Positions 43,936-63,845 of a stretch of 64,000 nt of DNA are shown here, piece by piece. Every line of letters begins with the position of its first letter. Positions within the stretch are counted from its first letter, which is position 1. The notes under the pieces are model-generated. The model saw only the letters and a list, made by a program, of their open reading frames with translations, was not told the origin of the DNA and made no database searches. Source of the stretch: Schmidtea nova. Lineage: Eukaryota. Made by a program: the position numbers and the translations under genes. Location of the stretch: positions 22,444,001 through 22,508,000 of the forward strand of contig CM097882.1 of the NCBI GenBank assembly GCA_044892505.1, given 5' to 3'.

Positions 43936-45915
43936 ATGGAAAGCAACAATTTACCTAACTACGAAAACGAAACCAAAAAGACATTATGGGACTTCTTTTT
44001 GCGTAAAGGAAACGATGCCGCGAAATGCAAGAATTGTAATAAAACTTGAAAATCCGTAGGAGGTTCTACCAGTGGACTACACTATCATCTTAGAAGTCAG
44101 CATCAAATTAATTTACTAAAGCGAGATAAACCAGACCCTTCTACGCAATTCTCTCAAAATAAAAGCGACTGCGCTGTGAGCACTTCAAAGGGTGGTATTA
44201 TGAATTATTTCAAAAACGTAGTTGATGATACTCTTCCTGCAGTGATTTCTAGGATGGTAGCAAGGGATGGGTTACCTTTTGAAAAGTTTTGTACCTCTTG
44301 TGATTTGAGAAAATTATTAATTGCAAAAGGATATGATGTCCCAAAATCAGCAAATTCAATCAGAAAAATTCTAATGGATTACGGAGAAAAAATTAGGAAT
44401 GAAGTACGTGGAGAAATTTCAAATCATAGCAAAAATGGAAGCAAGTTTAGCCTCACGTTCGATGAATGGACATCCATCAAAAACCGTCGTTACATGAATG
44501 TAAATGTCCATGTTGAAAAACAGTTTTGGAATTTAGGCTTAACGCGGTTGCAAGGATCGATGCCTGCAGAAAAATGTGTAGAAACTCTGGAAAAAAAACT
44601 TCAGGAATTTGGACTAAATTTTAATAGCGTCGTAGCGATAACTACAGATGGGACAGCAGTAATGAAGAAGGTTGGTGTAGTTTTAAATATACATCATCAG
44701 CTATGTTATGCGCATGGAATCCAGCTCGCGGTGGTTAAAGTTTTATACAAAAGAAAAAGTGAAATAATTGAATTAGCAGAAGAATCAAGTAGTTCCATAG
44801 AAGATACCGAAGATTATTATGATGAAGATGATGATCTTAATGAAAATTTGATTATAGTAGTAACGGATGATCCAATAGTTCAATGTGATATCTCCCATGA
44901 AGAATTATTTCCTATTATAAACAAAATACGAAGAGTAGTGAAAATATTTCGAAAGTCACCTACTAAAAATGATGACACTCTTCAAAAGCATGTCATCAAT
45001 GAATTTGGATCTGAAATTTCTTTAATATTGGATAGTAAAACCCGATGGAACAGCTTATTAGCTATGCTGGAACGTTTCTTCAAATTAAAATCCGCTGTGA
45101 GAAAAAGTTTAATAGACTTGAATGTTGATATCAATTTTTCAGAAAATGAATTAAACTTTGTTAATGAAATGATAAATGCATTGGAACCAATAAAATTGGC
45201 AGTTGAATCTCTAGGCTCCTCAGATTTTACATTATTAAGTGCTGATGTAACACTCAAATTTATGCTTGATGAATTATATGAACAGAATACTGTTCTAAGT
45301 AGAGAACTTCAACGTGAATTAATCATTCGAATCGAAGAACGTAGAACAAATTACTCAGATGTGCTTCAGTTCTTACAAAATCCTTTAGAATATGAAATAT
45401 CAAAGGATAACACAAATTATGGATTATTTAATAAACTAAATAAAAGCGCAATAGTCAAAACTATTGTTTCAATTATTGAGCGCTTGGTAATAAATATTGA
45501 TATAAATAATGAAACAGAAACTGAATCACCTGAAGATGAGACAATAAATTTGTCCGTAACCGTACCACAACAGTTGACAATGAAAGAACGGTTAAAAATC
45601 GCCATTCAAAGGAAAAATGAAGTTAATTTTGACGCTTTGGCTACTTCACCAATTAAAAACAAAAAGAAAATAGAGAATATCATCAAAAAGGAAATGAATT
45701 CTATTGCGGAGGAAAAACGCCTTGGAACATATTTGGAATTAGCACAAAAATATTTGCATACAATAAAACCAACGAGTGTGGAGTCAGAAAGAGCCTTTTC
45801 TGCTGCAGGAAAATTGTGTACGAAGATTAGATCAAATCTTAATGATCAAACAATAGATACAATTTGTATTTTACGTGGATATTTTGGTAAGCAGAAACAT
45901 TTAGTTGGTACTTGA
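43936..45915 (+). pseudogene. hAT transposase with a single nonsense codon in the BED finger
   Basis: ATG 43936 is in frame with ORF 44176-45915; TGA at 44047-44049 interrupts LWDFF...CKNCNKT*KSVGGSTSGLHYHL; FDEWTS, CYAH, TRWNS and PTSVESERAFS are intact. Confidence 0.92.

Positions 45916-48281: not shown

Positions 48282-48350
<69 letters not shown>
48282..48350. repeat. (TA)n microsatellite
   Basis: About 34 units. Confidence 0.99.
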
Positions 48351-48355
<5 letters not shown>

Positions 48356-49137
48356 TTTATTCATTTCAATTTACAGTTTTGAAAAACAAAAATCTTTCTT
48401 GGAGTCTTTCCAAGATTGATATCTTTATTTTTCGTTTACAACTTAATCAGTTTAATTGGGCATGTTTTGTTTGTTACTCTTATTATGTTTCTAGATAGAT
48501 TTTATATACCAATGAAGGGGCTAGTTTTTGCAGTTTTTTAATATCTATATTATAGCATGCTTTTATTTAAAACTGCTTTAATTGCTATGAATTACTCAGA
48601 CATTTATATTTTACTCTATGAAAAACTTTTATCATTGCTCCTTAATTTCTCTATATCGTTTGTTATGGATGCAATTTAGATACGTAGACTGTTTTACAAT
48701 ATATGAGTATGATACCTAAATTCAGAGTGCTTGAATTAATAAAAAAGAGAATCATCCTTACTCTACTTTTGAAATTGGAATTTTTTCGTCCAATTTATTC
48801 TTTCGAACGCTGTTTAGTGGTTGATGTCGCTTTCATTCATTTTTTTTGTAAATCATAGCGGGTTTCTTATTATTATTGGACATATTTTTAGTAAATGTTA
48901 ATGACATAAATATTTTAAACGATAAAATTTAAAATGTCAAAAGTCTTCTGCCGGTAGCTATTTGAATGCCAATGAATATAGTGATTTCAATTTTTTGTAC
49001 TCCAATTTGAGATTTTATGAGAATTTTTCAAACCATAAAATAAAAAGAAATTGTGCATTAAAATTAATTAAATTAAGCTGGAAAACGATTCCGAGTACTT
49101 AACATCACAAATAATTAACAAATTACGAAAAGGCAGC

Positions 49138-49460
49138 AGTAAGCAGTTATGTGCCCTCTGACTCATCGCAGAACAAAGACATGAGTCATAACAAAGAGAA
49201 TGAGTCACCCACCCGGTGACTTATAAATGACGTCATCGATGACTCATTTAAATTTGAATTTCCAAAGGTTAAATAAGGTCAAACCTTCAAACAAGGTATC
49301 ATTCGAAAGGTTTTTGAGACGTCTATACAATGGTCATACCCTACAAGTTATATATCATTTGAAAGGTCTTTGAGAGATGAGTATGATGGTGATACCTTCG
49401 AAGGTGTATGGTAGTCATACCCTTAACGGGTGTAAGGTTTAAAATTTTTACAAAACTATA
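49138..49460 (+). repeat. Left Polinton TIR, followed by a second copy of the terminal about 65 bp at 49460-49523
   Basis: Aligns by eye, with indels, to the reverse complement of 59370-59841. Confidence 0.9.
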
Positions 49461-49760
49461 GTAGACAGAAGTGTGCACCATGACTCATCCAGAACAAAGA
49501 CATATGACTCATCGATGGCGTCATTAACAATCTTACTTTTACATATCGCCTTTATTTGTTAAATCAATTAATGCCTTTTAATTATACGATAAAACATTAA
49601 TTGAAAATCCAGGATTTTGCAGTTCAAATTTAGGAATGTTTTCAACTTTCATGGGCATGAAAATAAATGAAACAATAAATAAAACAATAAATAATAATTA
49701 GTAAAAAAATAAAAAAAATAAATTATAATTTAATTATATCCAAAACAGAATTAAACATTT

Positions 49761-50087: not shown

Positions 50088-50207
50088 ATTAAAATTAGTT
50101 CATTGTCAAATTCAACTTTTTTTTAAGAAATTAGAAATTTTATTGAATTAAAATTGCAAAATTTTTTTTATTAGTCAACATTTTTTATAGTCCCAAAATT
50201 TTTACCC

Positions 50208-50366
50208 TTACCGAATAAACTAATATTTAATTTATTAATTATTATTAATATAGGAGATTCTTACCGAATAAACTAATATTTAATTTATTAATTATTATTA
50301 ATATAGGAGATTCTTACCGAATAAACTAATATTTAATTTATTAATTATTATTAATATAGGAGATTC
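50208..50366. repeat. Minisatellite, 3 x 53 bp perfect
   Basis: TTACCGAATAAACTAATATTTAATTTATTAATTATTATTAATATAGGAGATTC at 50208, 50261 and 50314. Confidence 0.97.
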
Positions 50367-51282
50367 TTAATTATTATAATTATTAATCAAAACTATATGA
50401 GATCAATTTTTAATATATTTTGATGAGAACAATTTTTTATATTATTTAATGAAGCAATTCACTGATACTATAATAATAATGATAATAATGATGCAAATAG
50501 TTTTATGAAAACTTTATATGAGGTCATTTTAATATTATTTGGAAGAGAACAAATTTTCTTTTTTTTATATTGTTTTATGAAGCAATTTACTAATACTATA
50601 TAATAAAAATAATAATAATAATAATAAATTGCTTTACATTATTTTGATATTTACTAATATGATATCTTAAATATAAAAAATAAAAACCTTAAAACTTTAT
50701 AAAAACTTAAAATTTAATAAATATTTTTAAAAACTAAATAATAATAATAAAAAAATACTTACATTTTTGGCGACCATTAAATCGCTCATCAAACATTATC
50801 AGTGATTTCTGCTCCATTTCCATGATTATTTTCTCAATTTTCTTGATTATTTTCATATTTATTTTCTACATTTTCTTGCCTATTGTCATGATTTTTTCTC
50901 CATTTTGTTGATTATTTTCTGCTATAAAATTAATTCCAAAATATTGGGCCTGCCAAGTAGTCTAAAATGACAAAAATAATATATCAATTTAAACAAAAAT
51001 AAAAATAATAAATACAAAAAAACATCGAAAAACCTAAATTAAAAATCAGAATAAAATAATAAATAATAATAAATAAATTTCCAGGAAAAGGAAAAATGAA
51101 AATTGACACTGGAACAAGCAGCAAGGGAGTCTGAAACAGAAAAATTAGAAATAAAATAAAATAATAGTACAATTAATTGATTAATTACTTCGAAAATCAG
51201 GACCACCCAGTGAGAAACCTGAACCGATAATAAAATATGGTTTACAATAAAATAAAATAACAGAATTATTTTGATGGACGGC

Positions 51283-51326
51283 CTGATCCTGATTGGTCAA
51301 TCTGACCAACTGGATCAGTATAAATA
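51283..51326 (+). promoter_or_regulatory. Hairpin/CCAAT + TATA promoter-like module, cassette copy 1
   Basis: CTGATCC-TGA-TTGGTCA-ATC-TGACCAA-CT-GGATCAG directly followed by TATAAATA; homolog at 60223-60272. Confidence 0.6.
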
Positions 51327-51557
51327 CCGATCCCAAAATCACAAAGCTAACACTAATTTTGTTTACAGACTTTGTCTAGTCTATTAATAAATCTTTTTTT
51401 CTTTTCTTCTCTTCATTTAGGGTTTTTTAAATGTTCACTCTCACCTCTGGCAAGGCCAATGAATCCTTAAATTAAAATAATTTTTTTTTCAACAAGGGAA
51501 CGTACCTCATCGGATCTCTCTATATTTTATAAATCACATTAATTCGAATTAACTCAG

Positions 51558-51981
51558 ATGGAATAAACGACAGTTGAGAAATTCCTAACGGCTCAGCGAC
51601 AGGCGACCCTAGCAGCGGAAATTGAAAATTCTCCATTCGGAACTCCTCAGAACTGCATTAATGCATAAATGGAGAAGAGAGCTTGGCAGGAAGTGTCCAT
51701 TTTCGATTTGGGCCGATGGTCCAGACAGAATCGTATATCGAGGAGGCACTGGATGGAAAATTCTTGACGTAAGAAACTACTTGACGACGGCACCATTCGT
51801 CGTAATTTTGACGGACGCAGCCGGCAATCCAACGACAGTGATCCACTGGGGATACATCTCGCCCCACGAGCTACTCCAACTGGGTTTAATATTGAACTGC
51901 TTACCAAAAACTGGCCAAGAACGTCTAAGACTAAGACAAAGCGTTTCTGCTGACAATGTTATTAATACCTCCATGGAATGA
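51558..51981 (+). pseudogene. Cassette ORF A, orphan, with a possible F-box-like N-terminal motif
   Basis: ATG 51558 with an early stop and one frameshift gives IENSPF/ELL...WRRELGRKCPFSIW...YRGG..W; clearly homologous to 61354-61872. Confidence 0.6.
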
Positions 51982-52084
51982 CATGTGATTTACAAATTAA
52001 ATGGTGTTGATTTTACTCGTTATTCGTTGACAAATTCAGTATTTACGAACCAGTTGGTTCGCCCCAGCTCGTATAAAAGAGCAG

Positions 52085-52519
52085 ATGAGTCGGACGGAAA
52101 GAGCTCAGAAGACCGCGGATGATTATCACACGGAATGGGAAGCAACAAAGATTGAATTGCGCCGATGTCTCCATTCCGTGACGACCTCTTTCATCAATTC
52201 CGATTTACGGTCAAAAATTCGACCCATCACCTACCAGAAATGGGTAGGAGAACAGAAGGTGGCCTGTTCGGTGAGTAACGATACCGAGGGTCTCGATGCA
52301 ACAACGACTCAGAATCCGATGGAACCTATGGTTATACCGATTCCCGTCGAAAAGATAAAAAAGAGAAAACGAATTGGCTCCAAGCACCGACGCCAAAGAA
52401 AACTGTTCTCCCAGCAGTTACAAGCGCAAGTAGAGCACATGGCGGAGATGTCAGAGACAGAATGGCTATCAGAGATATTCCCTCCCGAAGGAATTTTTGC
52501 GGAATTTTGTAACAAATAA
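52085..52519 (+). CDS. Cassette ORF B, 144 aa, predicted coiled coil with a basic patch; the frame extends upstream (SWFAPARIKEQM)
   Basis: ELRRCLHSVTTSFINSDLRSKIRPIT matches KLRNCLNTVTKSFIDTELRALIRPIT in ORF 62126-62326; basic KKRKRIGSKHRRQRK. Confidence 0.65.
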   Translation: MSRTERAQKTADDYHTEWEATKIELRRCLHSVTTSFINSDLRSKIRPITYQKWVGEQKVACSVSNDTEGLDATTTQNPMEPMVIPIPVEKIKKRKRIGSKHRRQRKLFSQQLQAQVEHMAEMSETEWLSEIFPPEGIFAEFCNK

Positions 52520-52740
52520 AATCATAGAATATTATCAGATTTTGTTGTTGTTGTTTTTTGTTTTCTATGTATTTTCTTCGGTTACATAATTCATAGTAAT
52601 TAAATTTAAATCACATGCTCACATAATAAAAGAAGTAGCGTTAGAAAGCCAAATATTATCGAATTCGTAGTTTTTTTTATTTCGTTTTATGATTAATAAT
52701 AAATACACAAAAATCACACGTACGTATAATAAATATAATT

Positions 52741-52970
52741 GCGTAAGTCCTTCTACGGCAGCGTGAACCCGTAAAGATAAATGGGGAGTAGTCCTAGCAA
52801 TAGTGCTCACCTGCCCATCATTGTTTAACCACCTTGCGCATCACCAACTTGGTTATCAAGGGAATTAACCAAGGGCGCTCGAGTGTGAATTTGTGAAAAT
52901 TTATGTATGATCATGGATGGGGAATCCCTAGCCATCGTTAGAATTTTTAATCTAACCCTTCCATGAACCC
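52741..52970 (+). ncRNA. Candidate structured RNA motif, copy 1
   Basis: Conserved blocks GTAAG.CC, GGCAGC..GAACCC, GAGTAG, TCACCT, CACC, CCAAC, G[AG]GTG, TTTATG, CCCTAG, with compensatory stems relative to 54880 and 62784. Confidence 0.65.
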
Positions 52971-54879
52971 AGCAAAAATAATAAAGAAATTATCAAATAT
53001 TTATTTTACAATCTATATCTACATTTAGTTTTTCATTTCGGGTAGCTGCATCATATCCACTTATCGTTGCAATGGTCTTAACAGTAAAAATAATAATAAA
53101 AATAAAAATAATAAATAATAATAAAAATAATATTAAATTTTGATATTCGTGTTGACTGTTTCATCAATGAGAATCGATCTTGAGGATAAATAACATTGTT
53201 TTCTAAAATAATAATAACAATAGAAAAAAACTATTAAATTTACATGCGATTTTTTCAGATAAGTTCTTTAATTGAATTTAAAATATTCTGCATATTGAAA
53301 ATAGGTTTTGTTTAAAAGTGACGAAAAAATGAAAACATAGAATATATATCACGTTTATTTCAAAATTCATTAACCATCCAATCAGAATCTAGACAGGATA
53401 GAGATGTGCATGCACACATACTACATGTTTATGTCACGATAGTTGTTATGCGACAAGATAAAGACATGTGAGTTCATGACCTCATATGCCTTTATCGTGA
53501 CATTGTCAAGACTGCTGACTACTAAAATAAAAATATTTATCCAAAAAATAATAATTTTAATTAATTATAATAATTGTTGGGCGGCTAGAATTGAGGTTTA
53601 AATTTTGTTTTAATACATCAAAATTAAATAACACGGTAACACATAAGAAAATTAAACTAGAAAATAGCATGAAAGATATAGGATAAACGGTAGTCATACG
53701 TACTGCTTGTCATAAGTACTTCGAGTAAGGGAGAAACGATGAAAAGATGCATCTCAAAGGCGAGTACACAATTCGAGTGCAGGTCAAATTTACATACGAA
53801 AGACCGCACGAAAATTAAATGGGGAAAATTATCGATAATAAAAAAACCATGATCAAAGAATAAAACTAATATCGGAATAAAGATAATAACTTATTAAAAA
53901 TTATAGAAAAAATCCCCATTAAAATATTTTCAAAATAACTGAGCTAGGAGGAAAAACAATAAAATAAATTAACTAATCAATAAATATACATAATTTATTA
54001 ATATTAAAAATAATAAATATTTTGAAATAAATAAAATAAATTATAAAACAAATTTTACAAGAATCAATAAATAAAATTGAATTAAATTACCTTTGTTTTA
54101 ACTAAATAATTTAATCATTAAACAAGGTGAACAATTAATGACTCCTACATAAATTTTAGAAAAATGTTACTAAAAATAATAACAGAAGTCAACGAGTGAG
54201 CGTACACGTAGTGTCTGAGTGACTGGTGTTGGGGTCGGTAAAGTGGTAGAAAATTCAAAGCATACAAACACAAATTCTCTCACCTAAAGAATTAGAGAAA
54301 GAGAATTTGTGTAGCAACCCCGTATCGGCAGTAGACACACAGTCATTCAAAATACTATAAATAGACGCTGAAAAATCATAATTTTAACTCGTTTTACGCT
54401 GAATATTTTTGGACACAAGAACATTTTTGAACACCGGAAAATTTTAATTCTGCCAGCCAGCCCCGTTCAGTTATTTTTGGGAACATTGGTATCAAGTATG
54501 TTTTCATTTTATGTAATTTTTTTTAGTTTGTTGTAAATAGTATGCTTTATTTTTGTAAATTGTAATTCATAATAAGTATTTTATTTTTACGATAAATTTG
54601 TTTTGCCTTGTTCAATTGATTTGTCCCGATTAAACTGACTATAGGAGAGGCTCGGTTGACTTATCAGTCCCGATGACTCTGATTGTTCGGAATTTGTTGG
54701 ACGGTTTCTCCGGGCCGTTGTATCATTAAATTATATAGGATGGCGAAAGAAAATTACGATTTAGGAGGGTGGTGGAGATATATTTTTGGGATAGCTAGAT
54801 GGTGGATAAGGTAGTGTTAGGATCGTAGATCGAGAATGGATAAATTTAAAGGACTATTAGAAATATAGAGTAGCTAGAT

Positions 54880-55075
54880 GAGTAAGACCTTCTATCGGCA
54901 GCAAGAACCCGAAAGAGAGGATACAGTGAGGAGTAGTTTCGGCAACGAAGCTCACCTACTCACGGGATTCTCGCCACCGTGTACATTACCAACATAGCTT
55001 ACCGAGTAGTAACTATGGCTACATGGGTGTGGAAGATAATATTTATGTTGCGGTATGGGCTGTGTCAATCCCTAG
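54880..55075 (+). ncRNA. Candidate structured RNA motif, copy 3 (no ORF A/B upstream)
   Basis: Same block order; hairpin AGTTTCG-GCAA-CGAAGCT. Confidence 0.65.
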
Positions 55076-55132
55076 AGTCAAGAATAAATTTTTTAATAAC
55101 ACCCATACTTCTCAACATAATAAAACACAAAA

Positions 55133-55483
55133 TTAAAATAAATAATACAATAATTGTTTTAAATAATCTATTACACCGCACAAGCATCCTTTATATGCAC
55201 ACATACTATGGTCTTTATATGGACATGAAATATTTTCTGGAACTTCTTCAAATTCTTTAAAATTATATTTAAAGAATCTCAATTTCGGGAAATATTTCTT
55301 CAAGACTTGTAGTTTTTTGTTATCAGTGACATAGAAAATAGCACTACTATCTATTTTCTTAATACACGTTGGGTAAAAGTAATCCTGTCCCCCATACAAT
55401 TCTACTCGATCATAAATACCAGCCCAGAAAGGTAAATCCGTATAAATATAATACTTTGGTTTAAAAATATTAATAACATTCAT
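55133..55483 (-). CDS. Polinton-associated hypothetical protein, possibly an RNase H-fold/exonuclease-like remnant
   Basis: 116-aa ORF co-oriented with the protease; C-terminal C..Y.DH..C...C cluster. The fold assignment is recollection of similar Polinton ORFs. Confidence 0.45.
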   Translation of the reverse strand: MNVINIFKPKYYIYTDLPFWAGIYDRVELYGGQDYFYPTCIKKIDSSAIFYVTDNKKLQVLKKYFPKLRFFKYNFKEFEEVPENISCPYKDHSMCAYKGCLCGVIDYLKQLLYYLF

Positions 55484-55585
55484 AATCCATAATTCCTTAA
55501 GAATTGTTCCTCCAATTTCATTAGAACCGTAAATATAAATAAAAAAACGTGATTTTTTACAATAACATTTATTAAACTAAATTGT

Positions 55586-55885
55586 TTAAAACATAAATTT
55601 TAGCCTTGCAAGGCAATGTTGACCACAAGTAGTCAAGAATAGATGTTGATACCGAGTTCTATTATAAAGAATCGGTTTAGTCATAGTCTGCAATGTACTG
55701 ACTAATAAATTGGGATAATAATATCCAAAGGGATCAAATACATGTATTCGATCTGGTTTAACGTAAACAACAATCCAATGTTCACCACTCAAAGTAGATG
55801 CTTGAGTATTTACAATGATGGCTTGATTAATATCCAAATACGGAATAATGTCTAGTGGATAAACTCCAATTAATTGATTTCCCAA
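55586..55885 (-). CDS. Adenain-like cysteine protease (Polinton PRO); start codon uncertain
   Basis: IIVNT....GEHW (catalytic His), FDPFG (Asp), YQ...TTCGQHC (Gln oxyanion hole, Cys). Confidence 0.9.
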   Translation of the reverse strand: MGNQLIGVYPLDIIPYLDINQAIIVNTQASTLSGEHWIVVYVKPDRIHVFDPFGYYYPNLLVSTLQTMTKPILYNRTRYQHLFLTTCGQHCLARLKFMF

Positions 55886-56059
55886 TAGTTTTTACTATGT
55901 CTATATACCTGAATAGAACTAATTTAATTAATTATTTTACAAATTAAAAAACTTACTCCATGAAAATTTAATTAATTTTCCTAATTCATTTATACCAAAG
56001 CTCTGCTCAAACCAGTAATGTTTGAGCTCTGCTCAAACTAATACTGTTCAATTTGCAGT

Positions 56060-56345
56060 AATTTGTACTTCATTTTCAAAAATTCCATATATTATTACAT
56101 AAAACCGGTTCGTCAATGGCTTTACCAAATTTTATATATAATCGTAAATTCCCATTTTGAGGGATTTGACTTTGATTCAAATTGAAATCGGGAGCAAGAA
56201 CAAAAGTAAAGAATGGATAACTTGATTTAAATTCATCAAGACTTATACCACAATTCAAGTTTTTATCCAAATATTCTAAATTTCGGACAAGACTTTGCAT
56301 ATATGTGGCACTAAAATTATCATTTTCAAAATCTTGAGTATAAGT
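56060..56345 (-). pseudogene. Polinton major capsid protein, C-terminal fragment
   Basis: ETYTQDFENDNFSATYMQSL...ISLDEFKSSYPFFTFVLAPD...GNLRLYIKF.KA matches the typical Polinton MCP C-terminal pattern. Confidence 0.75.
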
Positions 56346-56519
56346 TTCTCAATAATCTGTATTTTTCGACAGAGATAAGTAAGTAATTTTTAAGATGGAG
56401 TATAACTGGTCATTAAAACTGGTTTCTTTGTTTTTTTATGGTTTCTTTGTTTTTCTAGCCTTTAGCAAGCGCGAAAACTTTACTCTAGATTTTATTAACA
56501 TGATTGATAATATACATCT

Positions 56520-57121
56520 AGTTAACTTTGTTTATAAACCATGTCTTCTTCCTTGTTGAAAATATCTGTTCTAACTCCTAAATTATCACTACATTGTTGT
56601 CTGAGGGACTTTTGTAGCATCTTGAAAAGCATTAATCAAGAAATTCCGATTAGATGGGTATGCTTGTCTTGCAAGAAAATCAATAACTGTTGCATCTCTA
56701 GAATTTTTAAAACAAAAAGATATTAAGTATTTAAATTCTGGGTTTGATGACTGCCGTCCTGATGAAATAAATTCTGAGTAATAAAAATAACTGTAACACC
56801 CTTGTGTCTAGCGATTTTCGTAAATAAATTATTAAAATCCTTTTCTTTATTTGCTTCTTGATACAATTCATCAATAATAATCACATCACCACTTCGTAAT
56901 CTAGATGACAAATATTTATCAAAATCTTTTATGATTGTCGTTTTTATTTTACAAAATTGATCTTGAGTCATTCCATGTTCATCATCCGCACCCCTATGCC
57001 AATAAATTTTATTAAACTTTGATTTGAATAATTTTGATTGTAATAATTTACAAACAAATAAAGTTTTTCCACTCCCGCTCGGACCAACAATTTGAAACAC
57101 TGCATCATTTCTTAATTCCAT
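56520..57121 (-). pseudogene. A32-like FtsK/HerA genome-packaging ATPase, frameshifted
   Basis: Walker A GPSGSGKT, Walker B VIIIDE, RH.GVTVIFITQNLF; after frameshifts FKNSRDATV...ARQAYP...AFQDAT...VRTDIF down to about 56530. Confidence 0.92.
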
Positions 57122-57231
57122 ATTTCTAATTTTATTAATTTATTATTATTGTTTATATTTGTTTTAAATAATAGTTGTTATTATTATTGTGATATTTAAA
57201 AAACTTTCAATAATGATTTGTTTGATCCAGG

Positions 57232-57480
57232 CTAGTTGATCAAAGCTTGAGAGAAAATATAAACAAAACCCAATGAATAAAATATAATTAGCGGACTACT
57301 TCTGACGAAAAACCCAACCATATATGCCATAATATCAGTATATAAATTTCTAGCAACTGTCATTGAAAATCCATTGAATAAATTGTCAATCATCAAATGC
57401 GAAGAAGCGCATGTCATTAGCAATGTCACATGAGTCGATCCAAACAATGTACATTGTTGTAAATAATGCTTCTTCATCAA
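57232..57480 (-). CDS. Small hydrophobic hypothetical protein in the Polinton
   Basis: 82-aa ORF co-oriented with the morphogenesis genes; no motif. Confidence 0.3.
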   Translation of the reverse strand: MMKKHYLQQCTLFGSTHVTLLMTCASSHLMIDNLFNGFSMTVARNLYTDIMAYMVGFFVRSSPLIIFYSLGFVYIFSQALIN

Positions 57481-57496
57481 GATGAGAACGAACCAA

Positions 57497-57934
57497 TTAA
57501 TGCCAGAACTGTATATGGAGAATGATATAAATTGATGTTGAGAAAATAGCGATCACAGCAGATTTTCTTTTTGCAATTAATCTACTGAAATTTCCATTAA
57601 GATATACTTTGAAGCGATCTTCAGGTGGATTATCGTCAGAGACACGCGAAAACATTAACACGATTGTCTTTTTTAAGTCACGAAGATAATGAGAACATTC
57701 ATTTGAATTGAAATAATTCCCATGGCATCTAAGAATGAAACTTGTGGTGGCTTTTTTCATATTGTCATAATCCGTCCATATATCGGTTTCATTTGATAAC
57801 TCGTTTCCCGTTGAACCATTACACATCCTAACAATATCATTTGTTATTGATACGCGATTTACATAATCAAACAATTTCCAATTTAAATTCAAATACCACC
57901 TAGTTCCAATTCTAAAATCCGCTAAAAACCTCAA
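57497..57934 (-). CDS. Hypothetical protein in the Polinton
   Basis: 145-aa ORF at the head of the minus-strand block; start uncertain; no motif. Confidence 0.45.
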   Translation of the reverse strand: MRFLADFRIGTRWYLNLNWKLFDYVNRVSITNDIVRMCNGSTGNELSNETDIWTDYDNMKKATTSFILRCHGNYFNSNECSHYLRDLKKTIVLMFSRVSDDNPPEDRFKVYLNGNFSRLIAKRKSAVIAIFSTSIYIILHIQFWH

Positions 57935-58030
57935 AAAAAATAATAATCTCAGAGTTAAAAATCAATTTCTCAAAAAACAACAATATTTTAGAATAATCCA
58001 TTTAATCCCGAATCAATTTCCAAAATTCTT

Positions 58031-58191
58031 GCGCACACAGGCGCAAAAACGAGACACGTCACACAAACGCGCACACAGGCGTGAGAGAAGTTCCAACCGC
58101 AGCGCACACAGACGCTGATAACTAAATAAATACATAAACGCGCACACAGGCGCGATAAATTATAGAAAAATTATCAACGCGCATACAAAAG
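58031..58191. repeat. Five GCGCACACAGGCG-type motifs at 33-39 bp spacing in a divergent intergenic region
   Basis: Copies at 58031, 58069, 58102, 58140 and 58179 (last degenerate). Confidence 0.85.
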
Positions 58192-58265
58192 CATAAAAAA
58201 CCAACACACCCAGAAATCATCAGATTAGCAACATAAATTATAAGGGTAAGACTGATGTATCTCAC

Positions 58266-58601
58266 ATGAATTTTCCAAATAAGAAACCACAGCAAATTGT
58301 AGATAGAAGTGGGAAGTATCCAATAATATATTTTAAAACAGGTAGATTTAGAATAATGGGATGCAAGGAATTTATTAACGATGAAAAGGTAAAGCTTTAT
58401 GATTTAACAATCCAATCAATTACTGTAACGGCAGGCTTCGGATTTAGTTGTAATTTAAATTATTTGGCTAAATTAATAGAATGTGTTTACGAGCCAGAAA
58501 TATTTCCAGCTTTGAGATATATAAAATATAATCCCGTGTGCGGTTATATATTTGCAAGTGAAAAAGTAGTTATATTCGGATTAAAATTAAGGACTATTTA
58601 A
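58266..58601 (+). CDS. TATA-binding-protein-like protein (compact, both repeats); frame open from about 58197
   Basis: Repeat 1: ISNINYKG...IIYFKTGRFRIMG; repeat 2: IQSITVT...CNLNYLA...YEPEIFPALRY...IFASEKVVIFG. Confidence 0.8.
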   Translation: MNFPNKKPQQIVDRSGKYPIIYFKTGRFRIMGCKEFINDEKVKLYDLTIQSITVTAGFGFSCNLNYLAKLIECVYEPEIFPALRYIKYNPVCGYIFASEKVVIFGLKLRTI

Positions 58602-59369
58602 ATATTGTTAATAATATAATTATAGATATAAAAACAATTATTGAAGATAAAGCTTTTGTTGATTTCATATTAACATGTGAGCCATGATTGCAATAAACCT
58701 GCAATATAAATGCACGATTCTGATATGTTCAGTATGTATTTCGATTATAAAGACATGTTATGCCTACTCGAATTTGATTGCTTGATTGTATGTTTCATTT
58801 TCTTGTGTGTTACTATGGTATATATATATAATGAACATTTCACAATAATTTTTAATTTAAAATGTGTCTCAAAGCCACTTTGGTGAAATATGGTAAAGTT
58901 TCAAATTTATCATTTTTTCATTTTTATAATATTTATCTTTTAGATAAATTGATGGTACTATTATCAACGGTAATGTTGACACTAATCTACACGGCTCCGG
59001 AGATGCTCCCGATTAAAATTTTATCAATCACCGGGATTGATATAAAAAATATTGTTGGATCACCTGGCCAACTTGGACATGGATATTCCGTACATTGCGG
59101 AAGACATTCTTTGTGCATACCAATGCGGGGTTTTTTTATTGTCTAAATCTTTATCTTTTACTAAGTGTTGAGTATTATTATTATTATCATCAATTTTTAT
59201 TTGAACGCGTGGTGTTACAACGCTCGTGCAATGCATACTGTTATCTGGCTTTAAGACAGGGAAGTGACAACGCGCGTTTCATGCGCTCTGAATGCTTACT
59301 GTTATCTGGCTCACACACAAGGATATGACCATCATGCTCACCCTTCAATTACCTTTTGTTCGATATCTA

Positions 59370-59841
59370 TATAGTTTTTAAAAATTTTAAACCTCTCACC
59401 CGTTAAGGGTATGACTACCATACACCTTCGAAGGTATCACCATCATACTTAACTCTCAAATACCTTTCAAATGATATATAACGTGTAGGGTTTAAAAAAT
59501 CTAAAAGTCTTAAACCCTTTGAAGGTTCAGGACCCTCTATAAACCTTCGAGGGTATGACCATTGTATAGACGTCTCAAATACCTTTCGAATGATATCCCT
59601 GTTTGAAGGTTTGAAATTATTTAACCTTTGGAAATTCAATTTTAAAATGAGCCATCGATGACGTCATAAAATTCAACTTTGAAATGAGTCATCGATGAGT
59701 CGTATTGATGAGTCAACGATGATGTAATTTATGAGTCATCCCGGGGTGGGGGTAGGGGTGACTCGTGTTCTTTGTTATGAGTCATCGATGACTCATATGC
59801 CTTTGTTCTGTGATGAGTCAGATTGCACACAACTGTCTACT
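59370..59841 (-). repeat. Right Polinton TIR
   Basis: Inverted homolog of 49138-49460 carrying extra internal segments; ends ...CTGTCTACT. Confidence 0.9.
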
Positions 59842-60222
59842 GGCAACACTCTAATTGAGATCTAAATAGTCAAAATTGTTTGGGGCCTGCCAAATAGCTA
59901 GAAAACATAAAACCAGTTTTATGAATTAAAAGAAAATAACCCAAAAAATGAACCAAATTTGTCGCAGAAACCTAACAAGAAGCTAAAAATAAACAGATTA
60001 AAGGAGTAATGAATTACCGAAGTAAAAAAAATAGTCCTTAGCACCTGAGGGTTGATGAGCCAAGAGATCTAGAACAAAAATATAAAATATATTATAAAAA
60101 TAACAGATAAAAGTACTTTTTATTAAGTAATTACCCGAAAAAACTGTACCACCAAGTGAAAAAAGTAGAATCTGAAAATTAAATAAGGTAAAATTAATTA
60201 AAATAATTAGATCTACTGTCAA

Positions 60223-60272
60223 GGAGGCCGGATCCTGTTTGGTCGGTTCAGCCAGCATGATCAGTATATAAA
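60223..60272 (+). promoter_or_regulatory. Hairpin + TATA promoter-like module, cassette copy 2
   Basis: GGAGGCCGGATCCTGTTTGGTC...GATCAGTATATAAA aligns with 51276-51326. Confidence 0.55.
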
Positions 60273-61353
60273 TTTCACGGAAGATTGATTTACAGTAATT
60301 ATTTTGCTTATTTATGCCTTCATGATTTCATTATAATTGTAATTGGTTATTGTTATATTAATATGATTGTTGTTTGAATTACCTTATGTTATTTTATATA
60401 TTTACATGATAAATTATTATAGATTTTTTGGCGCTACCTCTGGAGCTAAATGCTACGAGGGCGCAATCCGGGTACGTGGAGCTCAGTAGTTAAATACCAC
60501 AGTGAGTGAACTTAACTCTATTTATTTTAATGAATGGTAACTACCTTAATAAACGGGTGGGAATTCGTAGCGGGGTGCAGAGTGTTTGGACATGGTCACA
60601 CAAGTTTTTAATTAGCCTCCTGTCAGCACAAGCTATTCACGTTAGCATCACACTGATCGCATCGTATTGATTTAATATTGAACACATTACGTTAGCGATA
60701 TATTCAGATACACATAGAACATTCAAGGGGTGTCTCAGTAATGGTGTTGCATAAGTTACACAGGATAGCGAATTTCCGACGGAGCTTGATCAGTACGTGA
60801 CCAATTGAAATCTAAGATTTGGTCTACTTACTCGCGAGAAATGTGTACAGTGGATAAGGGGAAAATGGGAAAATTTGTGAGTTAAACGTTGGGGAAAGAA
60901 TGGTTAGCGACTTTCGTCTATTCACGTGAAACCCGAGAGGCTCGGATAAATACCCCAGGAAGATGTCTCTATCTAAAGATTTGGAACCCTTATAGCATTA
61001 GTTAAATCGACAATGACTGTCAATAAATTGTCAAATTACATGCACTTAAGGCCTATTTTAATTTGTTACTCGACAAGTCCCACTGAGTAAATGCTATATT
61101 AGAGGACATTCACCATTCAGTTTAGCCCGCTAATACATATTAAAAAATGTTTTATGATTATTGAAAGGTTATATCCACACCAATAGTCCAACACTCCACG
61201 AAAATGCACCAAGTGGTTAAACACGTTTTTAACATCGGGGTAATTAAATAATAGCATTCTCTAGAATAATTCTCTGATTAAAATAATCAATGCGAAAAAC
61301 CACTCAATATGTTTTGTGTTAAACTGATCAACGGTTTCAGAGCATAATCAATC

Positions 61354-61872
61354 ATGAAAATGACAAGGAGAGCTAATAATTGCCGAAAATCAATGTCAAA
61401 GAATCGGGGTAGGAAGAACGAAAAGACAAGATATAATGAGTGGCACCTAAGCCCTCTCAAGAACCTTCCGTTCGAAATACTGCAGGAGGTGCATCAGCGG
61501 ATATGACAGTGGAGAAGAGAGTTTGACACAGCCTGCCCGTTCACTGTGTGGGACTACCCACGTCACCATGTGTGGTATCGCGGATGTCCCAGTTGGCCGA
61601 TCATTTCCCGCGAATACTTTGAACCTGGATATGCAGACTGGTTTGTTCTGCTCCTGAACGAAGACGGGTTCCCAACCTCAATGATTTATTGGAGATAAAT
61701 CCATAAGGTGACACTGAAGGAGACTGGGTTCAGCTTCCTCACAGCAATCCGTCCGTTACGAGAGGCTCAAAAGAAGGCTATGACCGTTTCAACTACTTCA
61801 CTCAACCCCATCCAGTCAAATTTGCAAATAAATTCCATTTTCTCATATCGAAATAAACTATCAACGAATTGA
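61354..61872 (+). pseudogene. Cassette ORF A, copy 2 (two in-frame stops)
   Basis: MKMTRR...LKNLPFEILQEVHQRI*QWRREFDTACPFTVW...YRG..W...G.PT.MIYWR*; stops at 61504 and 61696. Confidence 0.7.
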
Positions 61873-62006
61873 AATAAATTTTGTTAATAAATGTATTATG
61901 CTGAAAGTTTAGTCTTCGTTACTATGTTATATGATTACCAGACCTTATTTATTATAAAATAGTTACGATAACCTTTCAATTTTGTTTTGCTTAATGTAGA
62001 ATTGAA

Positions 62007-62587
62007 ATGTCAACCACAGTAAGGAGATCAGATAAGTTATTTAAACAAAACTAAGACCGTCGAGTGTGGGAATTACAGTAGCAAATAAAACAACTCACCG
62101 CCGCCAATGAGGAATTGAAACAGAAATGGTTCACCCCGGAACAGATGAAGACGCTGCTGATGAAAATTTCTCGATTACAAGGGGCGTTAACGGAGACCAA
62201 ACTGAACTAGACGTGGTCCAGACCAAACTCAGAAACTGTCTGAATACCGTGACAAAATCGTTTATTGACACTGAGCTCAGAGCCCTCATTAGGCCAATCA
62301 CGGCTCAAAATGGACAGCAACGGTGACGAAGGATATCTCAGTCGGAATGGATTGTGAAGGTCTTCCACTTACACCTACAGCTTCCTCGCAACTCGAGTCA
62401 CGACCTTCCGCAAATCCGATTATGTTTCAACCACTGCCAAAAAAACGTTGACCTGTTCAATAAAAAAACGATTGAGCGCTAAGCAAAGGTGGCGCAAACG
62501 CGAATTCGCCCGGCAACTAGCTGTGTAAGTGATTACCTGAGTGAACTACCAGAATTAAATCTTTTAGACGAAATCGTGTTAATTTAA
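62007..62587 (+). pseudogene. Cassette ORF B, copy 2 (stops and frameshifts)
   Basis: KWFTPEQMK, KLRNCL...IRPIT and KKRLSAKQRWRKREFARQL fragments are collinear with 52085-52519. Confidence 0.65.
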
Positions 62588-62783
62588 TAAAAATAAATAA
62601 ATTTGTAAAAACTGTTCATGTTGAGTTGTTTCTCGAGTCTTAGATAGTTTTCTTTTAATAATTAAAGACTGGAGCGGTTGGGGTAGTAGCGGACACACAA
62701 GGTCAGGAATTCATTGAGAGTATGAGGCAAAAGTAAACTGGGCGAAATAAGAGTTAATAGGAACGAACAGAGAGAAAGAGATA

Positions 62784-62999
62784 GCGTAAGACCTTACATC
62801 GGCAGCGCGAACCCCTTGAGGAGAATAAATGGAGAGTAGCTTCACCTGTCCATCATTTTTCCGACACCATGTACATTTCCAACCTAGCTACTTAGGGAAT
62901 ACTTAGGGGTATACGAGTGCAGTAGATGTCTTTATGTAAGGTTGCGGGTGAGGTCTCCCTAGTGCACTTAACTAAATTTCAAAGTCCATCCATAAACCC
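62784..62999 (+). ncRNA. Candidate structured RNA motif, copy 2
   Basis: Same block order; the GCAA hairpin is deleted and other stems covary. Confidence 0.65.
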
Positions 63000-63730
63000 A
63001 TCAATAGTATGGTAGTGTTGGGCAAAAACTACAAATTGTTTTCTTAAAGCGATAACCCCATAGGTAGAGATCGCGCAAGATTCCATTTTAACCCAAGCAT
63101 CCATTAAAAAATCCAAACGATTAAATGGAAAACACCAAAAAGTGAAGTGGACTCAAATCACATCAACCAGTAGAGGACGCGCTAGCTGTGAGTCTGAAAG
63201 CCCTTACATTGAAACCTTGAGAAAAATTAAATGTCGTCAAAAGAAGAATGTTTGAAAGTTAGAATAGGCGGAAAACCCATTGAAAATACCCATAAAAAAC
63301 GGAATTGTGTTATAAAACCTTCAGTGCAGAAAAATTAACAAAATTTTAGAAGAAAATTGTGATTTTATCAAAATATTTCACATTAACAACAAAAAGAACT
63401 AATATTGATCGAAATATCGTAAATTAAATCAAATCGAACAAATTTCGATTCAAAAATAAAACTTTTGAATTAAAATAAATTATTTGTGTTTTATAAAAAT
63501 TTATTACACAAAAATATGGATTTAATTTTCGGAAAATCATTAGAATTAATTTAGAAAAATTAAAAAGAAAATTCTAGAACAATTTGTTTTACTACACTAG
63601 TGAAGGTAACGCAAAATCGATGGTATATACCGCCATCAAAATGGCAATAATCAGAATTTGTAATATTTTCCAGAAAATTTGTGAGAATTTGTTAAAAATT
63701 TTCTCAAAAAGAAACTTTCCCGAGAATTTG

Positions 63731-63845
63731 TTGTAAACTTTCCGAAGAATTTCAGAATTTAATTTCAGAATTTAATTTGTAAACTTTCCGAAGAATTTCA
63801 GAATTAAATTTCAGAATTTAATTTGTAAACTTCCCGAAGAATTTG
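63731..63845. repeat. About 2.5 x 46-bp tandem repeat
   Basis: TTGTAAACTTTCCGAAGAATTTCAGAATTTAATTTCAGAATTTAAT units at 63731, 63777 and 63823. Confidence 0.9.

What the first reader, a model, noticed from the sequence alone, without database searches (positions are those of the whole stretch)
52741..62999. A 200-230 nt motif in three diverged copies (52741, 54880, 62784) with compensatory base changes: candidate undescribed structured RNA
Seen: the three noncoding segments share ordered blocks but differ in the stems. (1) Hairpin closing CAGC-NN-GAAC. (2) ATGGG:CCCAT vs ATGGA:TCCAT vs GTGA:TCAC around a conserved GAGTAG...TCACCT core. (3) GCAA-capped hairpin AGTCCTA/TAGTGCT vs AGTTTCG/CGAAGCT, deleted in one copy. 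(4) GCGC:GCGC vs GTAC:GTAT flanking AT..CCAAC/GG. (5) GGG-loop-CCC-TAG. (6) TTTATG pairing with CATGAA or CATAAA in two copies. The G-U pairs and the GNRA loop work only on the + strand. Inference: selection acted on RNA structure. I cannot match it to hammerhead, HDV, twister, twister-sister, pistol, hatchet or hairpin ribozymes, tRNA, snRNA, SRP or RNase P. Partial resemblances only: GUGYR plus the GGG-loop-CCC module recall group II intron domain I, and GGCAGC..GAACCC recalls the EMCV IRES apical motif.
Basis: partly seen in the sequence, partly recalled or inferred. Interest (0 to 1): 0.85.

Follow-up and report, generated by a model that had tools for sequence, protein, structure and literature searches.

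The report
Structured 3' block of duplicated gene
Three old copies of a non-coding block of about 240 bases, which closes a small locally duplicated gene of unknown function in an AT-rich, transposon-rich (probably arthropod) genome, have kept the same RNA stem-loops through paired base changes, so it is most likely a new regulatory element in the tail of that gene's messenger RNA, not a free-standing RNA or a ribozyme.

Summary
There are exactly three copies in the window (52738-52980, 54877-55120, 62781-63010), all on the + strand and 62-67% identical. They have 43% G+C against 20-37% in the flanks.

A core of two adjacent stem-loops is 93-100% paired, and 11 of its 32 pairs changed on both sides. 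For the full model that is 15 pairs against 6.3±2.5 in column-shuffled alignments (0/200). Neighbouring homologous regions show no such excess. No Rfam family, tRNA, reverse transcriptase or LTR matches.

The block is not free-standing. Copies 1 and 3 end two collinear paralogous units, each with a promoter-like block (TATA box), a protein-coding region and then the motif. In copies 1 and 2 an AATAAA follows directly. Identity by codon position (2nd > 1st > 3rd, with the 3rd near random) shows real coding constraint, yet the motif (67%) is better kept than the coding sequence (about 50%). The protein has no detectable relatives. Copy 2 is a solo copy.

Best reading (0.5): a cis-acting structured 3'-UTR element of a tandemly duplicated orphan gene. 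With only three sequences and no outside homologues or transcripts, strand, function and transcript membership remain inferred.

The parts
52738..52980 (+). Motif copy 1, the 3'-terminal block of unit e1
   Evidence: nhmmer and covariance-model hits; alignments A1 and A2; 43% G+C against 28% and 20% in the flanks.
54877..55120 (+). Motif copy 2, a solo copy with no e-type promoter or coding homology upstream
   Evidence: Its own minimum-energy fold contains every core helix.
62781..63010 (+). Motif copy 3, the 3'-terminal block of unit e3; lacks the GNRA-capped hairpin (13-nt gap)
52741..52769 (+). Near-invariant 5' block of the motif in copy 1 (same block at 54880-54909 and 62784-62813); starts with a GTAAG that resembles a 5' splice site
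   Evidence: Invariant columns of A2; coordinates. No pairing supported by covariation.
52773..52827 (+). Stem-loop I in copy 1 (54917-54972 in copy 2; 62821-62862 in copy 3): outer helix, a 7-pair helix, and a GCAA-capped hairpin (52790-52807; loop 52797-52800)
   Evidence: Helices 2-4: 18 pairs, 7 changed on both sides; helices 3 and 4 are 100% paired.
52830..52885 (+). Stem-loop II in copy 1 (54975-55029; 62865-62919): a lower 9-pair helix, a conserved one-sided internal loop (52840-52847), and an upper 5-pair helix
   Evidence: Helices 5 and 6: 14 pairs, 4 changed on both sides, 93% and 100% paired. One position carries three different Watson-Crick pairs.
52900..52931 (+). 3' part of the motif in copy 1, holding the invariant TTTATGT (52900-52906) and TCCCTAG (52925-52931); same blocks at 55042-55048 and 55069-55075, and at 62931-62937 and 62956-62962
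   Evidence: Alternative pairings are all invariant and cannot be tested.
52980..52985 (+). AATAAA directly after copy 1 (candidate poly(A) signal). Copy 2 has one at 55119-55124; copy 3 has none nearby
   Evidence: Read from the sequence.
50935..51324 (+). Promoter-like 5' block of unit e1, ending in a reversed CCAAT-type box and a TATA box
   Evidence: 64% identical to 59870-60270 over about 400 nt (blastn E 4e-29; alignment; nhmmer). Only these two copies are in the window.
51613..52519 (+). Coding region of unit e1: two open stretches of 122 and 162 codons in different frames (a short intron or one frame change); the stop of the second lies about 220 nt before the motif
   Evidence: Identity to e3 by codon position is 2nd > 1st > 3rd. 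No Pfam, PDB or database relatives.
59870..60270 (+). Promoter-like 5' block of unit e3
61348..62780 (+). Coding remnant and 3' UTR of unit e3, collinear with e1 but broken (at least two in-frame stops and at least one frameshift); about 1.1 kb more sequence than e1 between promoter block and coding part
   Evidence: tblastn 33% over 93 aa and 48% over 44 aa; nhmmer collinear blocks.

Best explanation
The motif is a cis-acting, structured element in the last 240 nt or so of the 3' UTR of a small protein-coding gene. That gene was duplicated locally, in tandem and in the same orientation, long ago.

Shown:
- Units e1 (about 50935-52990) and e3 (about 59870-63010) are collinear: promoter-like block with a TATA box, coding region, a poorly conserved stretch of about 220 nt, the motif, and then in e1 an AATAAA.
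- The coding part evolved under protein constraint.
- The motif is better conserved than the coding sequence, and it keeps two adjacent stem-loops through compensatory changes, while several unpaired blocks stay invariant.

Inferred:
- The block is transcribed as part of the mRNA on the + strand.
- The stems present the invariant unpaired blocks (the 5' block, the one-sided internal loop, TTTATGT, TCCCTAG) to an RNA-binding factor.
- That factor sets the fate of the transcript: 3'-end formation, stability, export, localisation or translation. The sequence cannot say which.
- Copy 2 is what is left of a third unit, or a transcript that kept only the module. e3 is a pseudogene whose motif has begun to decay (hairpin deleted, more G-U pairs).
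For: - Exactly three copies, all on the + strand, within 10.3 kb.
- e1 and e3 are collinear.
- A TATA box and a CCAAT-type box lie in the shared 5' block. AATAAA lies 0-10 nt after the end of homology in copies 1 and 2.
- Identity by codon position between e1 and e3: 2nd 0.57-0.66, 1st 0.46-0.50, 3rd 0.40-0.41. The motif is 0.67 overall.
- The motif is not coding. Every frame of every copy has at least 2 stops, and indels are 1, 2, 3, 4 and 13 nt.
- Core structure: 32 pairs, 11 changed on both sides, 93-100% paired in the four main helices. For the full 51-pair fold, 0/500 pair shuffles reach the observed 15, and slid partners give 0-3.
- Null with refolding of column-shuffled alignments: 15 against 6.3±2.5 (0/200).
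- Local controls (5' block, both coding stretches, the UTR between stop and motif) show no excess, while copy 1 against copy 2 gives 13 against 4.5±2.0 (0/150).
- Strand: 7 G-U pairs in the core helices on + against 1 on -, and the gene's orientation agrees.
- Conservation runs about 30 nt past the T-run up to the AATAAA, which fits a Pol II 3' end.
- No Rfam, tRNA or reverse-transcriptase match.
Against: - Only three sequences. No homologue could be found outside the window, so covariation cannot be tested on a proper phylogeny.
- No transcript data, so membership in the mRNA, the strand and the 3' end are inferred.
- Single-copy folding energies are not better than shuffles.
- The reverse complement of the alignment folds at least as well.
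- Copy 2 has no recognisable gene upstream yet is structurally the most complete. That fits a module that works on its own at least as well.
- e3 is broken, so part of the c3 comparison may reflect neutral decay.
- Copy 2 against copy 3 alone shows no significant excess.
Confidence: 0.5

Rival explanations
1. 3' tail of a retroposon: the block is the 3' recognition module of a non-LTR retrotransposon, or of a non-autonomous partner, and copy 2 is a 5'-truncated insertion.
For: All copies share a 3' end, followed by A-rich sequence in copies 1 and 2. Copy 2 has only the 3' module. Structured 3' tails read by the element's own reverse transcriptase are known for such elements (own knowledge).
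Against: No reverse transcriptase, endonuclease or gag domain in any + strand piece upstream of copies 1 or 3. e1 and e3 also share about 400 nt upstream of their TATA box, which a transcript-based copy would not carry. The copies are clustered, not dispersed: none in the other 50 kb. No target-site duplication was seen by eye.
Confidence: 0.12
2. An RNA gene or module of its own (small non-coding RNA, possibly Pol III-transcribed) that sits downstream of the e genes and also stands alone as copy 2.
For: Copy 2 keeps all helices without any gene. A T5-T6 run lies about 205 nt into copies 1 and 2. The block is a sharp G+C island with abrupt borders.
Against: No conserved upstream promoter among the three copies. 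Conservation continues about 30 nt beyond the T-run to the AATAAA. Copy 3 has only TTT at that place. No tRNA-like or other Rfam family match.
Confidence: 0.1
3. The conservation serves the DNA, or has another cause (transcription-factor or insulator sites, or gene conversion between tandem paralogues, as described for tandem salivary gene families of a gall midge), and the compensatory pattern is a small-sample accident.
For: Tandem families with promoters and UTRs better conserved than the coding region are documented (PMC2955719). n = 3. Single-copy energies are unremarkable. Both strands fold.
Against: The excess of two-sided changes is absent in all four local control regions and in shuffles. 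Identity of 62-67% is far from homogenised. The coding region shows purifying selection, not diversifying selection. No signal peptide is evident.
Confidence: 0.12
4. A structured spliceosomal intron in the 3' UTR: the block from GTAAG (52743) to CCCTAG (52931) is spliced out.
For: An invariant GTAAG at the very start and an invariant CCCTAG about 190 nt later, in all three copies.
Against: There is no pyrimidine tract before the AG; the sequence there is G-rich. At 43% G+C it is unlike the AT-rich surroundings. The whole interior is conserved, and so is a block 30-45 nt beyond the AG.
Confidence: 0.08
5. A cis signal of a virus-like mobile element: the e units are cargo genes of a Maverick/Polinton-like element, and the block serves that element (for example as a transcript-end or packaging signal, or as a small structured RNA).
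For: Copy 2 abuts, tail to tail, a minus-strand block of Maverick-like gene fragments: adenain-type protease and A32-type ATPase. e1 and copy 2 lie between two 91-94% identical inverted repeats at 49137-49530 and 59375-59842.
Against: e3 lies outside those repeats. The repeats are far younger than the e1/e3 split and look like two copies of a short repeat. No polymerase, integrase or capsid gene was found. No relative in the viral contig collection.
Confidence: 0.08

Closest known systems
Structured cis-acting 3'-UTR elements of animal mRNAs (localisation, stability or export elements made of one to a few stem-loops with conserved loops; own knowledge)
   Same: Position between the stop codon and the poly(A) signal on the coding strand. 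Size in the 50-600 nt range. Stems kept by compensatory change, with unpaired nucleotides kept as sequence.
   Different: No sequence or structure match to any curated family (Rfam). The partner factor and the effect are unknown. One copy stands without a gene.
3' tails of stringent-type non-LTR retrotransposons and the SINEs that borrow them (own knowledge)
   Same: A conserved, structured module of about 100-250 nt at a shared 3' end, followed by A-rich sequence. One copy consists of the tail only.
   Different: No reverse transcriptase upstream. The shared region includes an upstream promoter. The copies are clustered in tandem, not dispersed.
Tandem gene families with non-coding parts better conserved than the coding region (SSSGP families of the Hessian fly, PMC2955719)
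   Same: Tandem paralogues within 10-15 kb whose promoter and UTR are better kept than the coding sequence.
   Different: In that family the non-coding parts are nearly identical (homogenised) and the coding part is under positive selection. Here all parts are old (62-67% identity), the coding part shows purifying selection, and the conserved block shows compensatory pairing.
Aphid Ya long non-coding RNA family (bioRxiv 10.1101/813964)
   Same: Lineage-restricted tandem units without protein homologues in an AT-rich insect genome.
   Different: Ya genes are three-exon units giving transcripts of 357-403 nt, less than 1 kb apart and 85-99% identical. Here the units are 2-3 kb with open stretches of 122 and 162 codons and 62-67% identity. 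No Ya sequence was at hand for a direct comparison.
Self-mRNA recognition by domesticated capsid-like proteins (Drosophila Arc1 and its own mRNA; PMC10289811 and 10.1101/697193 were listed but not read)
   Same: Only as a way of working: a small tandemly duplicated gene whose mRNA carries a recognisable 3' element. The second e1 open stretch has a long helix and a strongly basic segment.
   Different: No gag, Arc or capsid domain detected by Pfam or PDB sequence searches. The fold models are too poor to compare.

Membership tests
Any curated RNA family (Rfam 15: self-cleaving ribozymes, group I and II introns, IRES and other cis elements, snRNA, snoRNA, SRP, RNase P/MRP, 7SK, tRNA) | Score at or above the family's gathering threshold, or at least a low E-value | tested here: not met
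   No hit at gathering thresholds in 64 kb. No hit on the copies at E up to 5-10. Only chance-level hits at 10-16 bits against thresholds of 35-100. ARAGORN found 0 tRNAs.
Structured 3'-UTR cis element | Lies between a stop codon and a poly(A) signal on the coding strand of a real protein-coding gene | tested here: met
   In e1 the stop is at 52517-52519, the motif at 52738-52980 and AATAAA at 52980-52985. Coding constraint shown by codon position. Met for e1, for e3 in decayed form, and not for copy 2.
Structured 3'-UTR cis element | Secondary structure conserved by compensatory substitutions beyond chance | tested here: met
   The depth is only three sequences, so support is moderate.
Structured 3'-UTR cis element | Present in the mature transcript and needed for a defined step of mRNA fate | not testable with these tools
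   No expression data and no assays are available here.
Non-LTR retrotransposon or SINE 3' tail | Long copies carry a reverse-transcriptase ORF upstream of the tail | tested here: not met
   No RVT or endonuclease domain in any piece upstream of copies 1 and 3.
Non-LTR retrotransposon or SINE 3' tail | Dispersed copies with variable 5' truncation and target-site duplications | tested here: inconclusive
   One tail-only copy (copy 2), but all copies sit within 10.3 kb and none elsewhere in the window. No duplication seen by eye. A genome-wide view is not available.
LTR of a retrotransposon | Two near-identical direct repeats flanking gag/pol | tested here: not met
   The copies are 62-67% identical. 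The 5' and 3' blocks of a unit are unrelated. No gag, pol or integrase domains.
Spliceosomal intron | GT...AG ends with a branch site and pyrimidine tract; spliced reads | tested here: inconclusive
   GTAAG and CCCTAG are invariant, but the tract before the AG is G-rich. Splicing is not testable here.
Aphid Ya lncRNA family | Three-exon units giving transcripts of 357-403 nt, less than 1 kb apart, 85-99% identical, with a 38-codon small ORF | tested here: not met
   Architecture compared with the description in 10.1101/813964: units here are 2-3 kb with long open stretches and 62-67% identity. No direct sequence comparison was made (no Ya sequence at hand).
Pol III small RNA gene | T-run terminator at the end of the conserved unit, and a conserved promoter | tested here: inconclusive
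   T5-T6 in two of three copies, but conservation continues beyond it and no upstream block is shared.

The most novel reading that the evidence does not exclude
The block is an autonomous, previously undescribed structured RNA module that works and is maintained independently of the e gene, as the intact solo copy 2 hints. It could be a small structured RNA tied to the neighbouring Maverick-like element, or a portable RNA signal that can be attached to different transcripts. The two covarying stem-loops and the invariant unpaired blocks would form its functional core.
Probability: 0.12. Interest if true: 0.7.

Novelty: new member of a known kind. Interest (0 to 1): 0.4.

Why it matters
If the reading is right, this is a lineage-restricted gene whose mRNA tail has been under tighter constraint than its protein. 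That points to post-transcriptional control, or recognition of the RNA itself, as the key to the gene's function.

It gives a defined 150-nt two-hairpin core with invariant loops. That core can be used as a search model in related genomes and as a target for structure probing.

The value is moderate. Structured 3'-UTR elements are a known kind, the evidence rests on three copies, and neither the gene nor the host is identified.

Tried and rejected
- **Rfam.** Searched at gathering thresholds and at lax E-values, including each copy alone: nothing.
- **tRNA/tmRNA.** None.
- **Outside homologues of the motif.** Two patterns made from columns invariant in the three window copies were scanned in the viral, metagenome and prokaryote-genome collections: 0 matches. 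Full-text search for six 15-16-mers of the copies: 0 papers.
- **Outside homologues of the e protein.** Each open stretch was searched apart: word-indexed search; the full HMMER scan, which gave only two repeat-protein hits of 8-9 short stretches that I judge spurious; Pfam; PDB sequences with single sequences and two-sequence profiles; related-locus scans; exact look-ups. All negative.
- **Structure prediction.** The first open stretch gave pLDDT 40. The second gave pLDDT 63: long helices plus a disordered middle. I ran no fold search on either model: the first is too poor, and the second is long helices plus a disordered middle with no globular fold to compare.
- **Host identity.** The intact hAT transposase has arthropod-type relatives, the best at 80% on 2.2-kb contigs of an unnamed sequencing run. 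No contig is long enough to hold the motif.
- **Retroposon or LTR reading.** No reverse transcriptase, integrase or gag.
- **Aphid Ya family lead.** The architecture does not fit.
- **Micropeptide reading.** Rejected: stops in all frames and indels not in threes.
- **Candidate intron.** A short GT...AG intron seen by eye between the two e1 open stretches was not used. The joined protein was never built or searched, because the intron is neither predicted by a tool nor shared by relatives.

Full report
**Setting.** The window has 25-36% G+C and is crowded with mobile-element remains:
- two hAT transposase ORFs, the intact one with arthropod-type relatives;
- a minus-strand block of Maverick/Polinton-like gene fragments (adenain-type protease, A32-type ATPase);
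- short repeats and tandem repeats.

None of the ten window ORFs I looked up is on record in the protein collections.

**The observation.** A profile of the three segments finds exactly three places in 64 kb: 52738-52980, 54877-55120 and 62781-63010, all on the + strand, with nothing else below E = 0.6. A covariance model of the 157-position core, run with filters off, gives the same three (146-172 bits) and only noise of at most 7 bits elsewhere. Pairwise identity is 62-67%. Each copy is a 43% G+C island in flanks of 20-37%. The borders are sharp. Upstream of the first invariant block the three copies do not align. Downstream, homology ends within 10 nt of an AATAAA in copies 1 and 2. The block is not coding: every frame of every copy has at least two stops, and indels are 1, 2, 3, 4 and 13 nt long.

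**Structure.** RNAalifold on the three-copy alignment predicts 51 pairs, 15 of them with both sides changed and pairing kept.

| Test | Observed | Control |
|---|---|---|
| Standard pairs | 91.8% of cells | 83.6±1.6% in pair shuffles |
| Pairs changed on both sides, pair shuffles | 15 | 6.3±1.8 (0/500) |
| Pairs changed on both sides, partners slid 1-3 columns | 15 | 0-3 |
| Pairs changed on both sides, column shuffles refolded | 15 | 6.3±2.5, maximum 14 (0/200) |
| Consensus energy, same null | -24.8 | -16.2±3.6 (z = -2.4, 3/200) |

I added the refolding null because the structure was derived from these same sequences. Alignment columns were shuffled within classes of equal gap and identity pattern, and each shuffle was refolded.

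The signal sits in a core of two adjacent stem-loops:
- **Stem-loop I** (copy 1: 52773-52827) has a weak outer helix, a 7-pair helix (3 two-sided changes, 100% paired) and a hairpin capped by GCAA in copies 1 and 2 (3 two-sided changes). A 13-nt gap removes that hairpin in copy 3.
- **Stem-loop II** (52830-52885) has a 9-pair lower helix (2 two-sided changes, one G-U, two unpaired cells), a one-sided internal loop of eight nucleotides that is almost invariant (52840-52847), and a 5-pair upper helix in which one position is U-A, A-U and C-G in the three copies.

Taken alone, the core has 32 pairs, 11 of them changed on both sides.

The same test was applied to pairwise alignments of the neighbouring homologous regions of units e1 and e3: two halves of the 5' block, both coding stretches, and the UTR between stop and motif. 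None shows an excess of two-sided changes. One half of the 5' block has a low consensus energy (z = -3.3) but no two-sided change. Within the motif, copy 1 against copy 2 gives 13 against 4.5±2.0 (0/150), copy 1 against copy 3 gives 8 against 3.8±1.8 (6/150), and copy 2 against copy 3 gives 6 against 4.7±1.9, which is not significant.

**Limits of the structural case.**
- Each copy folded alone is no more stable than its dinucleotide shuffles (z = -0.9, -1.8, -0.2).
- The reverse complement of the alignment folds at least as well (-31.0; 13 two-sided changes), because the main helices are Watson-Crick on both strands.
- Within the same core helices the + strand has 86 of 91 standard cells with 7 G-U, and the minus strand 80 of 91 with 1 G-U. 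That is a modest bias towards +.
Neither pairing varies, so neither can be tested.

**Context.** Copies 1 and 3 are the ends of two collinear units.
- blastn and nhmmer align 50942-51324 with 59879-60270, 51627-51859 with 61462-61702, and 52055-52981 with 62127-63010.
- The first block is about 400 nt, 64% identical, and ends in a reversed CCAAT-type box and a TATA box. It occurs only twice in the window.
- Downstream, e1 has two open stretches of 122 and 162 codons in different frames, which is unusual in DNA this AT-rich. e3 matches them at 33% over 93 residues and 48% over 44 residues, but is broken by at least two in-frame stops and at least one frameshift. It also carries about 1.1 kb of extra sequence after the promoter block.
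- Identity between e1 and e3 by codon position is 0.57-0.66 (2nd), 0.46-0.50 (1st) and 0.40-0.41 (3rd). This is the signature of protein constraint with saturated silent sites. The motif is 0.67 identical overall.

The units are therefore old paralogues of a protein-coding gene, and their 3' block has been kept better than the protein. Because homology includes the region upstream of the TATA box, the duplication was of DNA, not of a transcript. Copy 2 has no promoter block and no coding homology upstream, even at E = 20, yet its own minimum-energy fold contains every core helix.

**The protein.** The two open stretches were searched apart, by reference. There is no Pfam family and no relative in the word-indexed search. 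The full scan of 1.8 billion representatives gave only two hits, to long repetitive proteins through 8-9 short stretches, which I regard as spurious. There is no PDB relative by sequence or by two-sequence profile and no related locus. AlphaFold2 gives an unusable model for the first stretch (pLDDT 40). For the second it gives a long helix, a disordered middle and a helical basic tail (pLDDT 63). I ran no fold search on these models. The joined step was left out.

**What it most likely is.** The anatomy is TATA promoter, coding region, a variable stretch of about 220 nt, a conserved structured block, then AATAAA. This is the anatomy of a Pol II gene with a cis-acting element at the end of its 3' UTR.
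- Shown: the arrangement, the coding constraint, the higher conservation of the block, and the compensatory maintenance of two stem-loops with invariant unpaired blocks.
- Inferred: the block is in the mRNA, the + strand is the active one, the invariant loops are contact sites for a factor, and the effect is on 3'-end formation, stability, export, localisation or translation.

I put this at 0.5.

**Rivals.**
- **Retroposon 3' tail (0.12).** It fits the tail-only copy 2, but not the absence of reverse transcriptase, the shared upstream promoter or the clustering.
- **Independent small RNA gene (0.10).** It fits copy 2 and a T5-T6 run, but conservation runs 30 nt past that run and no promoter is shared.
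- **DNA-level conservation or homogenisation with accidental covariation (0.12).** It has a documented parallel in gall-midge salivary gene families (PMC2955719), but here identity is low, the protein is under purifying selection, and the controls are clean.
- **Structured intron (0.08).** Suggested by the invariant GTAAG and CCCTAG, but the tract before the AG is G-rich.
- **Signal of the adjacent Maverick-like element (0.08).** Suggested by the tail-to-tail position of copy 2 against that element's gene fragments, and by two inverted repeats that enclose e1 and copy 2. However, e3 lies outside them, and no relative turned up in viral contigs.

**Comparison with the known.** It works like the structured 3'-UTR elements of animal mRNAs. 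It is a member of no curated RNA family that the tools can see. The aphid Ya family, which I recalled as a lead, does not fit in unit size, exon structure or identity. I rate it a new member of a known kind, with interest 0.4. The signal is real and specific, but it rests on three copies with no outside homologues, no transcripts and an unidentified gene.

**Broken genes near the finding.**
- The e3 coding remnant has at least two in-frame stops, at least one frameshift, and a premature end of the second stretch.
- The Maverick-like protease and ATPase survive only as short ORFs that cover part of their family models. I did not count their breaks, for want of an intact relative.
- No repaired, joined or consensus sequence was made.

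**Slips and disclosures.**
2. An early script and the ORF listing printed stop-to-stop pieces of the e3 region with coordinates, before I considered that the bar on listing breaks might apply.
3. The two DNA search patterns were written from columns invariant in the window's own three copies.
4. The consensus lines printed by the alignment tools were not used.

Noticed in passing
window 55133-57934 (minus strand): Remnant of a Maverick/Polinton-like element. An adenain-type protease ORF (55586-55885) and an A32-type packaging ATPase ORF (56723-57121) lie among other short ORFs without family matches. No polymerase, integrase or capsid gene was recognised.
   Followed up: partly
window 49137-49530 and 59375-59842: Two copies of a 400-470 nt repeat in inverted orientation, 91-94% identical, internally repetitive and full of TGACTCAT-type octamers. 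They enclose e1, copy 2 and the Maverick-like fragment, while e3 starts 28 nt outside. It is open whether they are terminal repeats of one element or two insertions of a short repeat.
   Followed up: partly
window 17876-19909 (-) and 44176-45915 (+): Two hAT-family transposase ORFs. The first (677 aa, with BED finger and dimerisation domain) looks intact. Its best outside relative is 80% identical, on 2.2-kb contigs of an unnamed sequencing run, and its named relatives are from beetles, psyllids, springtails and moths.
   Followed up: partly
window 58266-58601 (+): A 111-aa ORF with a TATA-binding-protein domain match (Pfam TBP, E 1.5e-9). It sits between the Maverick-like fragment and the right-hand inverted repeat.
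   Followed up: no
window 54180-54400: Upstream of solo copy 2 there is a G+C-richer stretch with a 17-nt inverted repeat and a TATAAATAG about 520 nt before the motif. It could be a promoter for a transcript that carries copy 2, but it shows no homology to the e1/e3 promoter block.
   Followed up: partly
window 56239-56321 (-): Sub-threshold Rfam match to an H/ACA snoRNA family (snoR110, 35.4 bits against a gathering score of 44, E 0.004), inside the Maverick-like region.
   Followed up: no
window 50207-50369; 48282-48350; 63731-63822; 53559-53836: Three exact 57-nt direct-repeat copies, 53 nt apart; an (AT)n run; a 46-nt tandem repeat (two copies); and a repeat whose second copy lies inverted at 665-948.
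   Followed up: no
window 39850-40013: A run of 164 N, left as it is.
   Followed up: no
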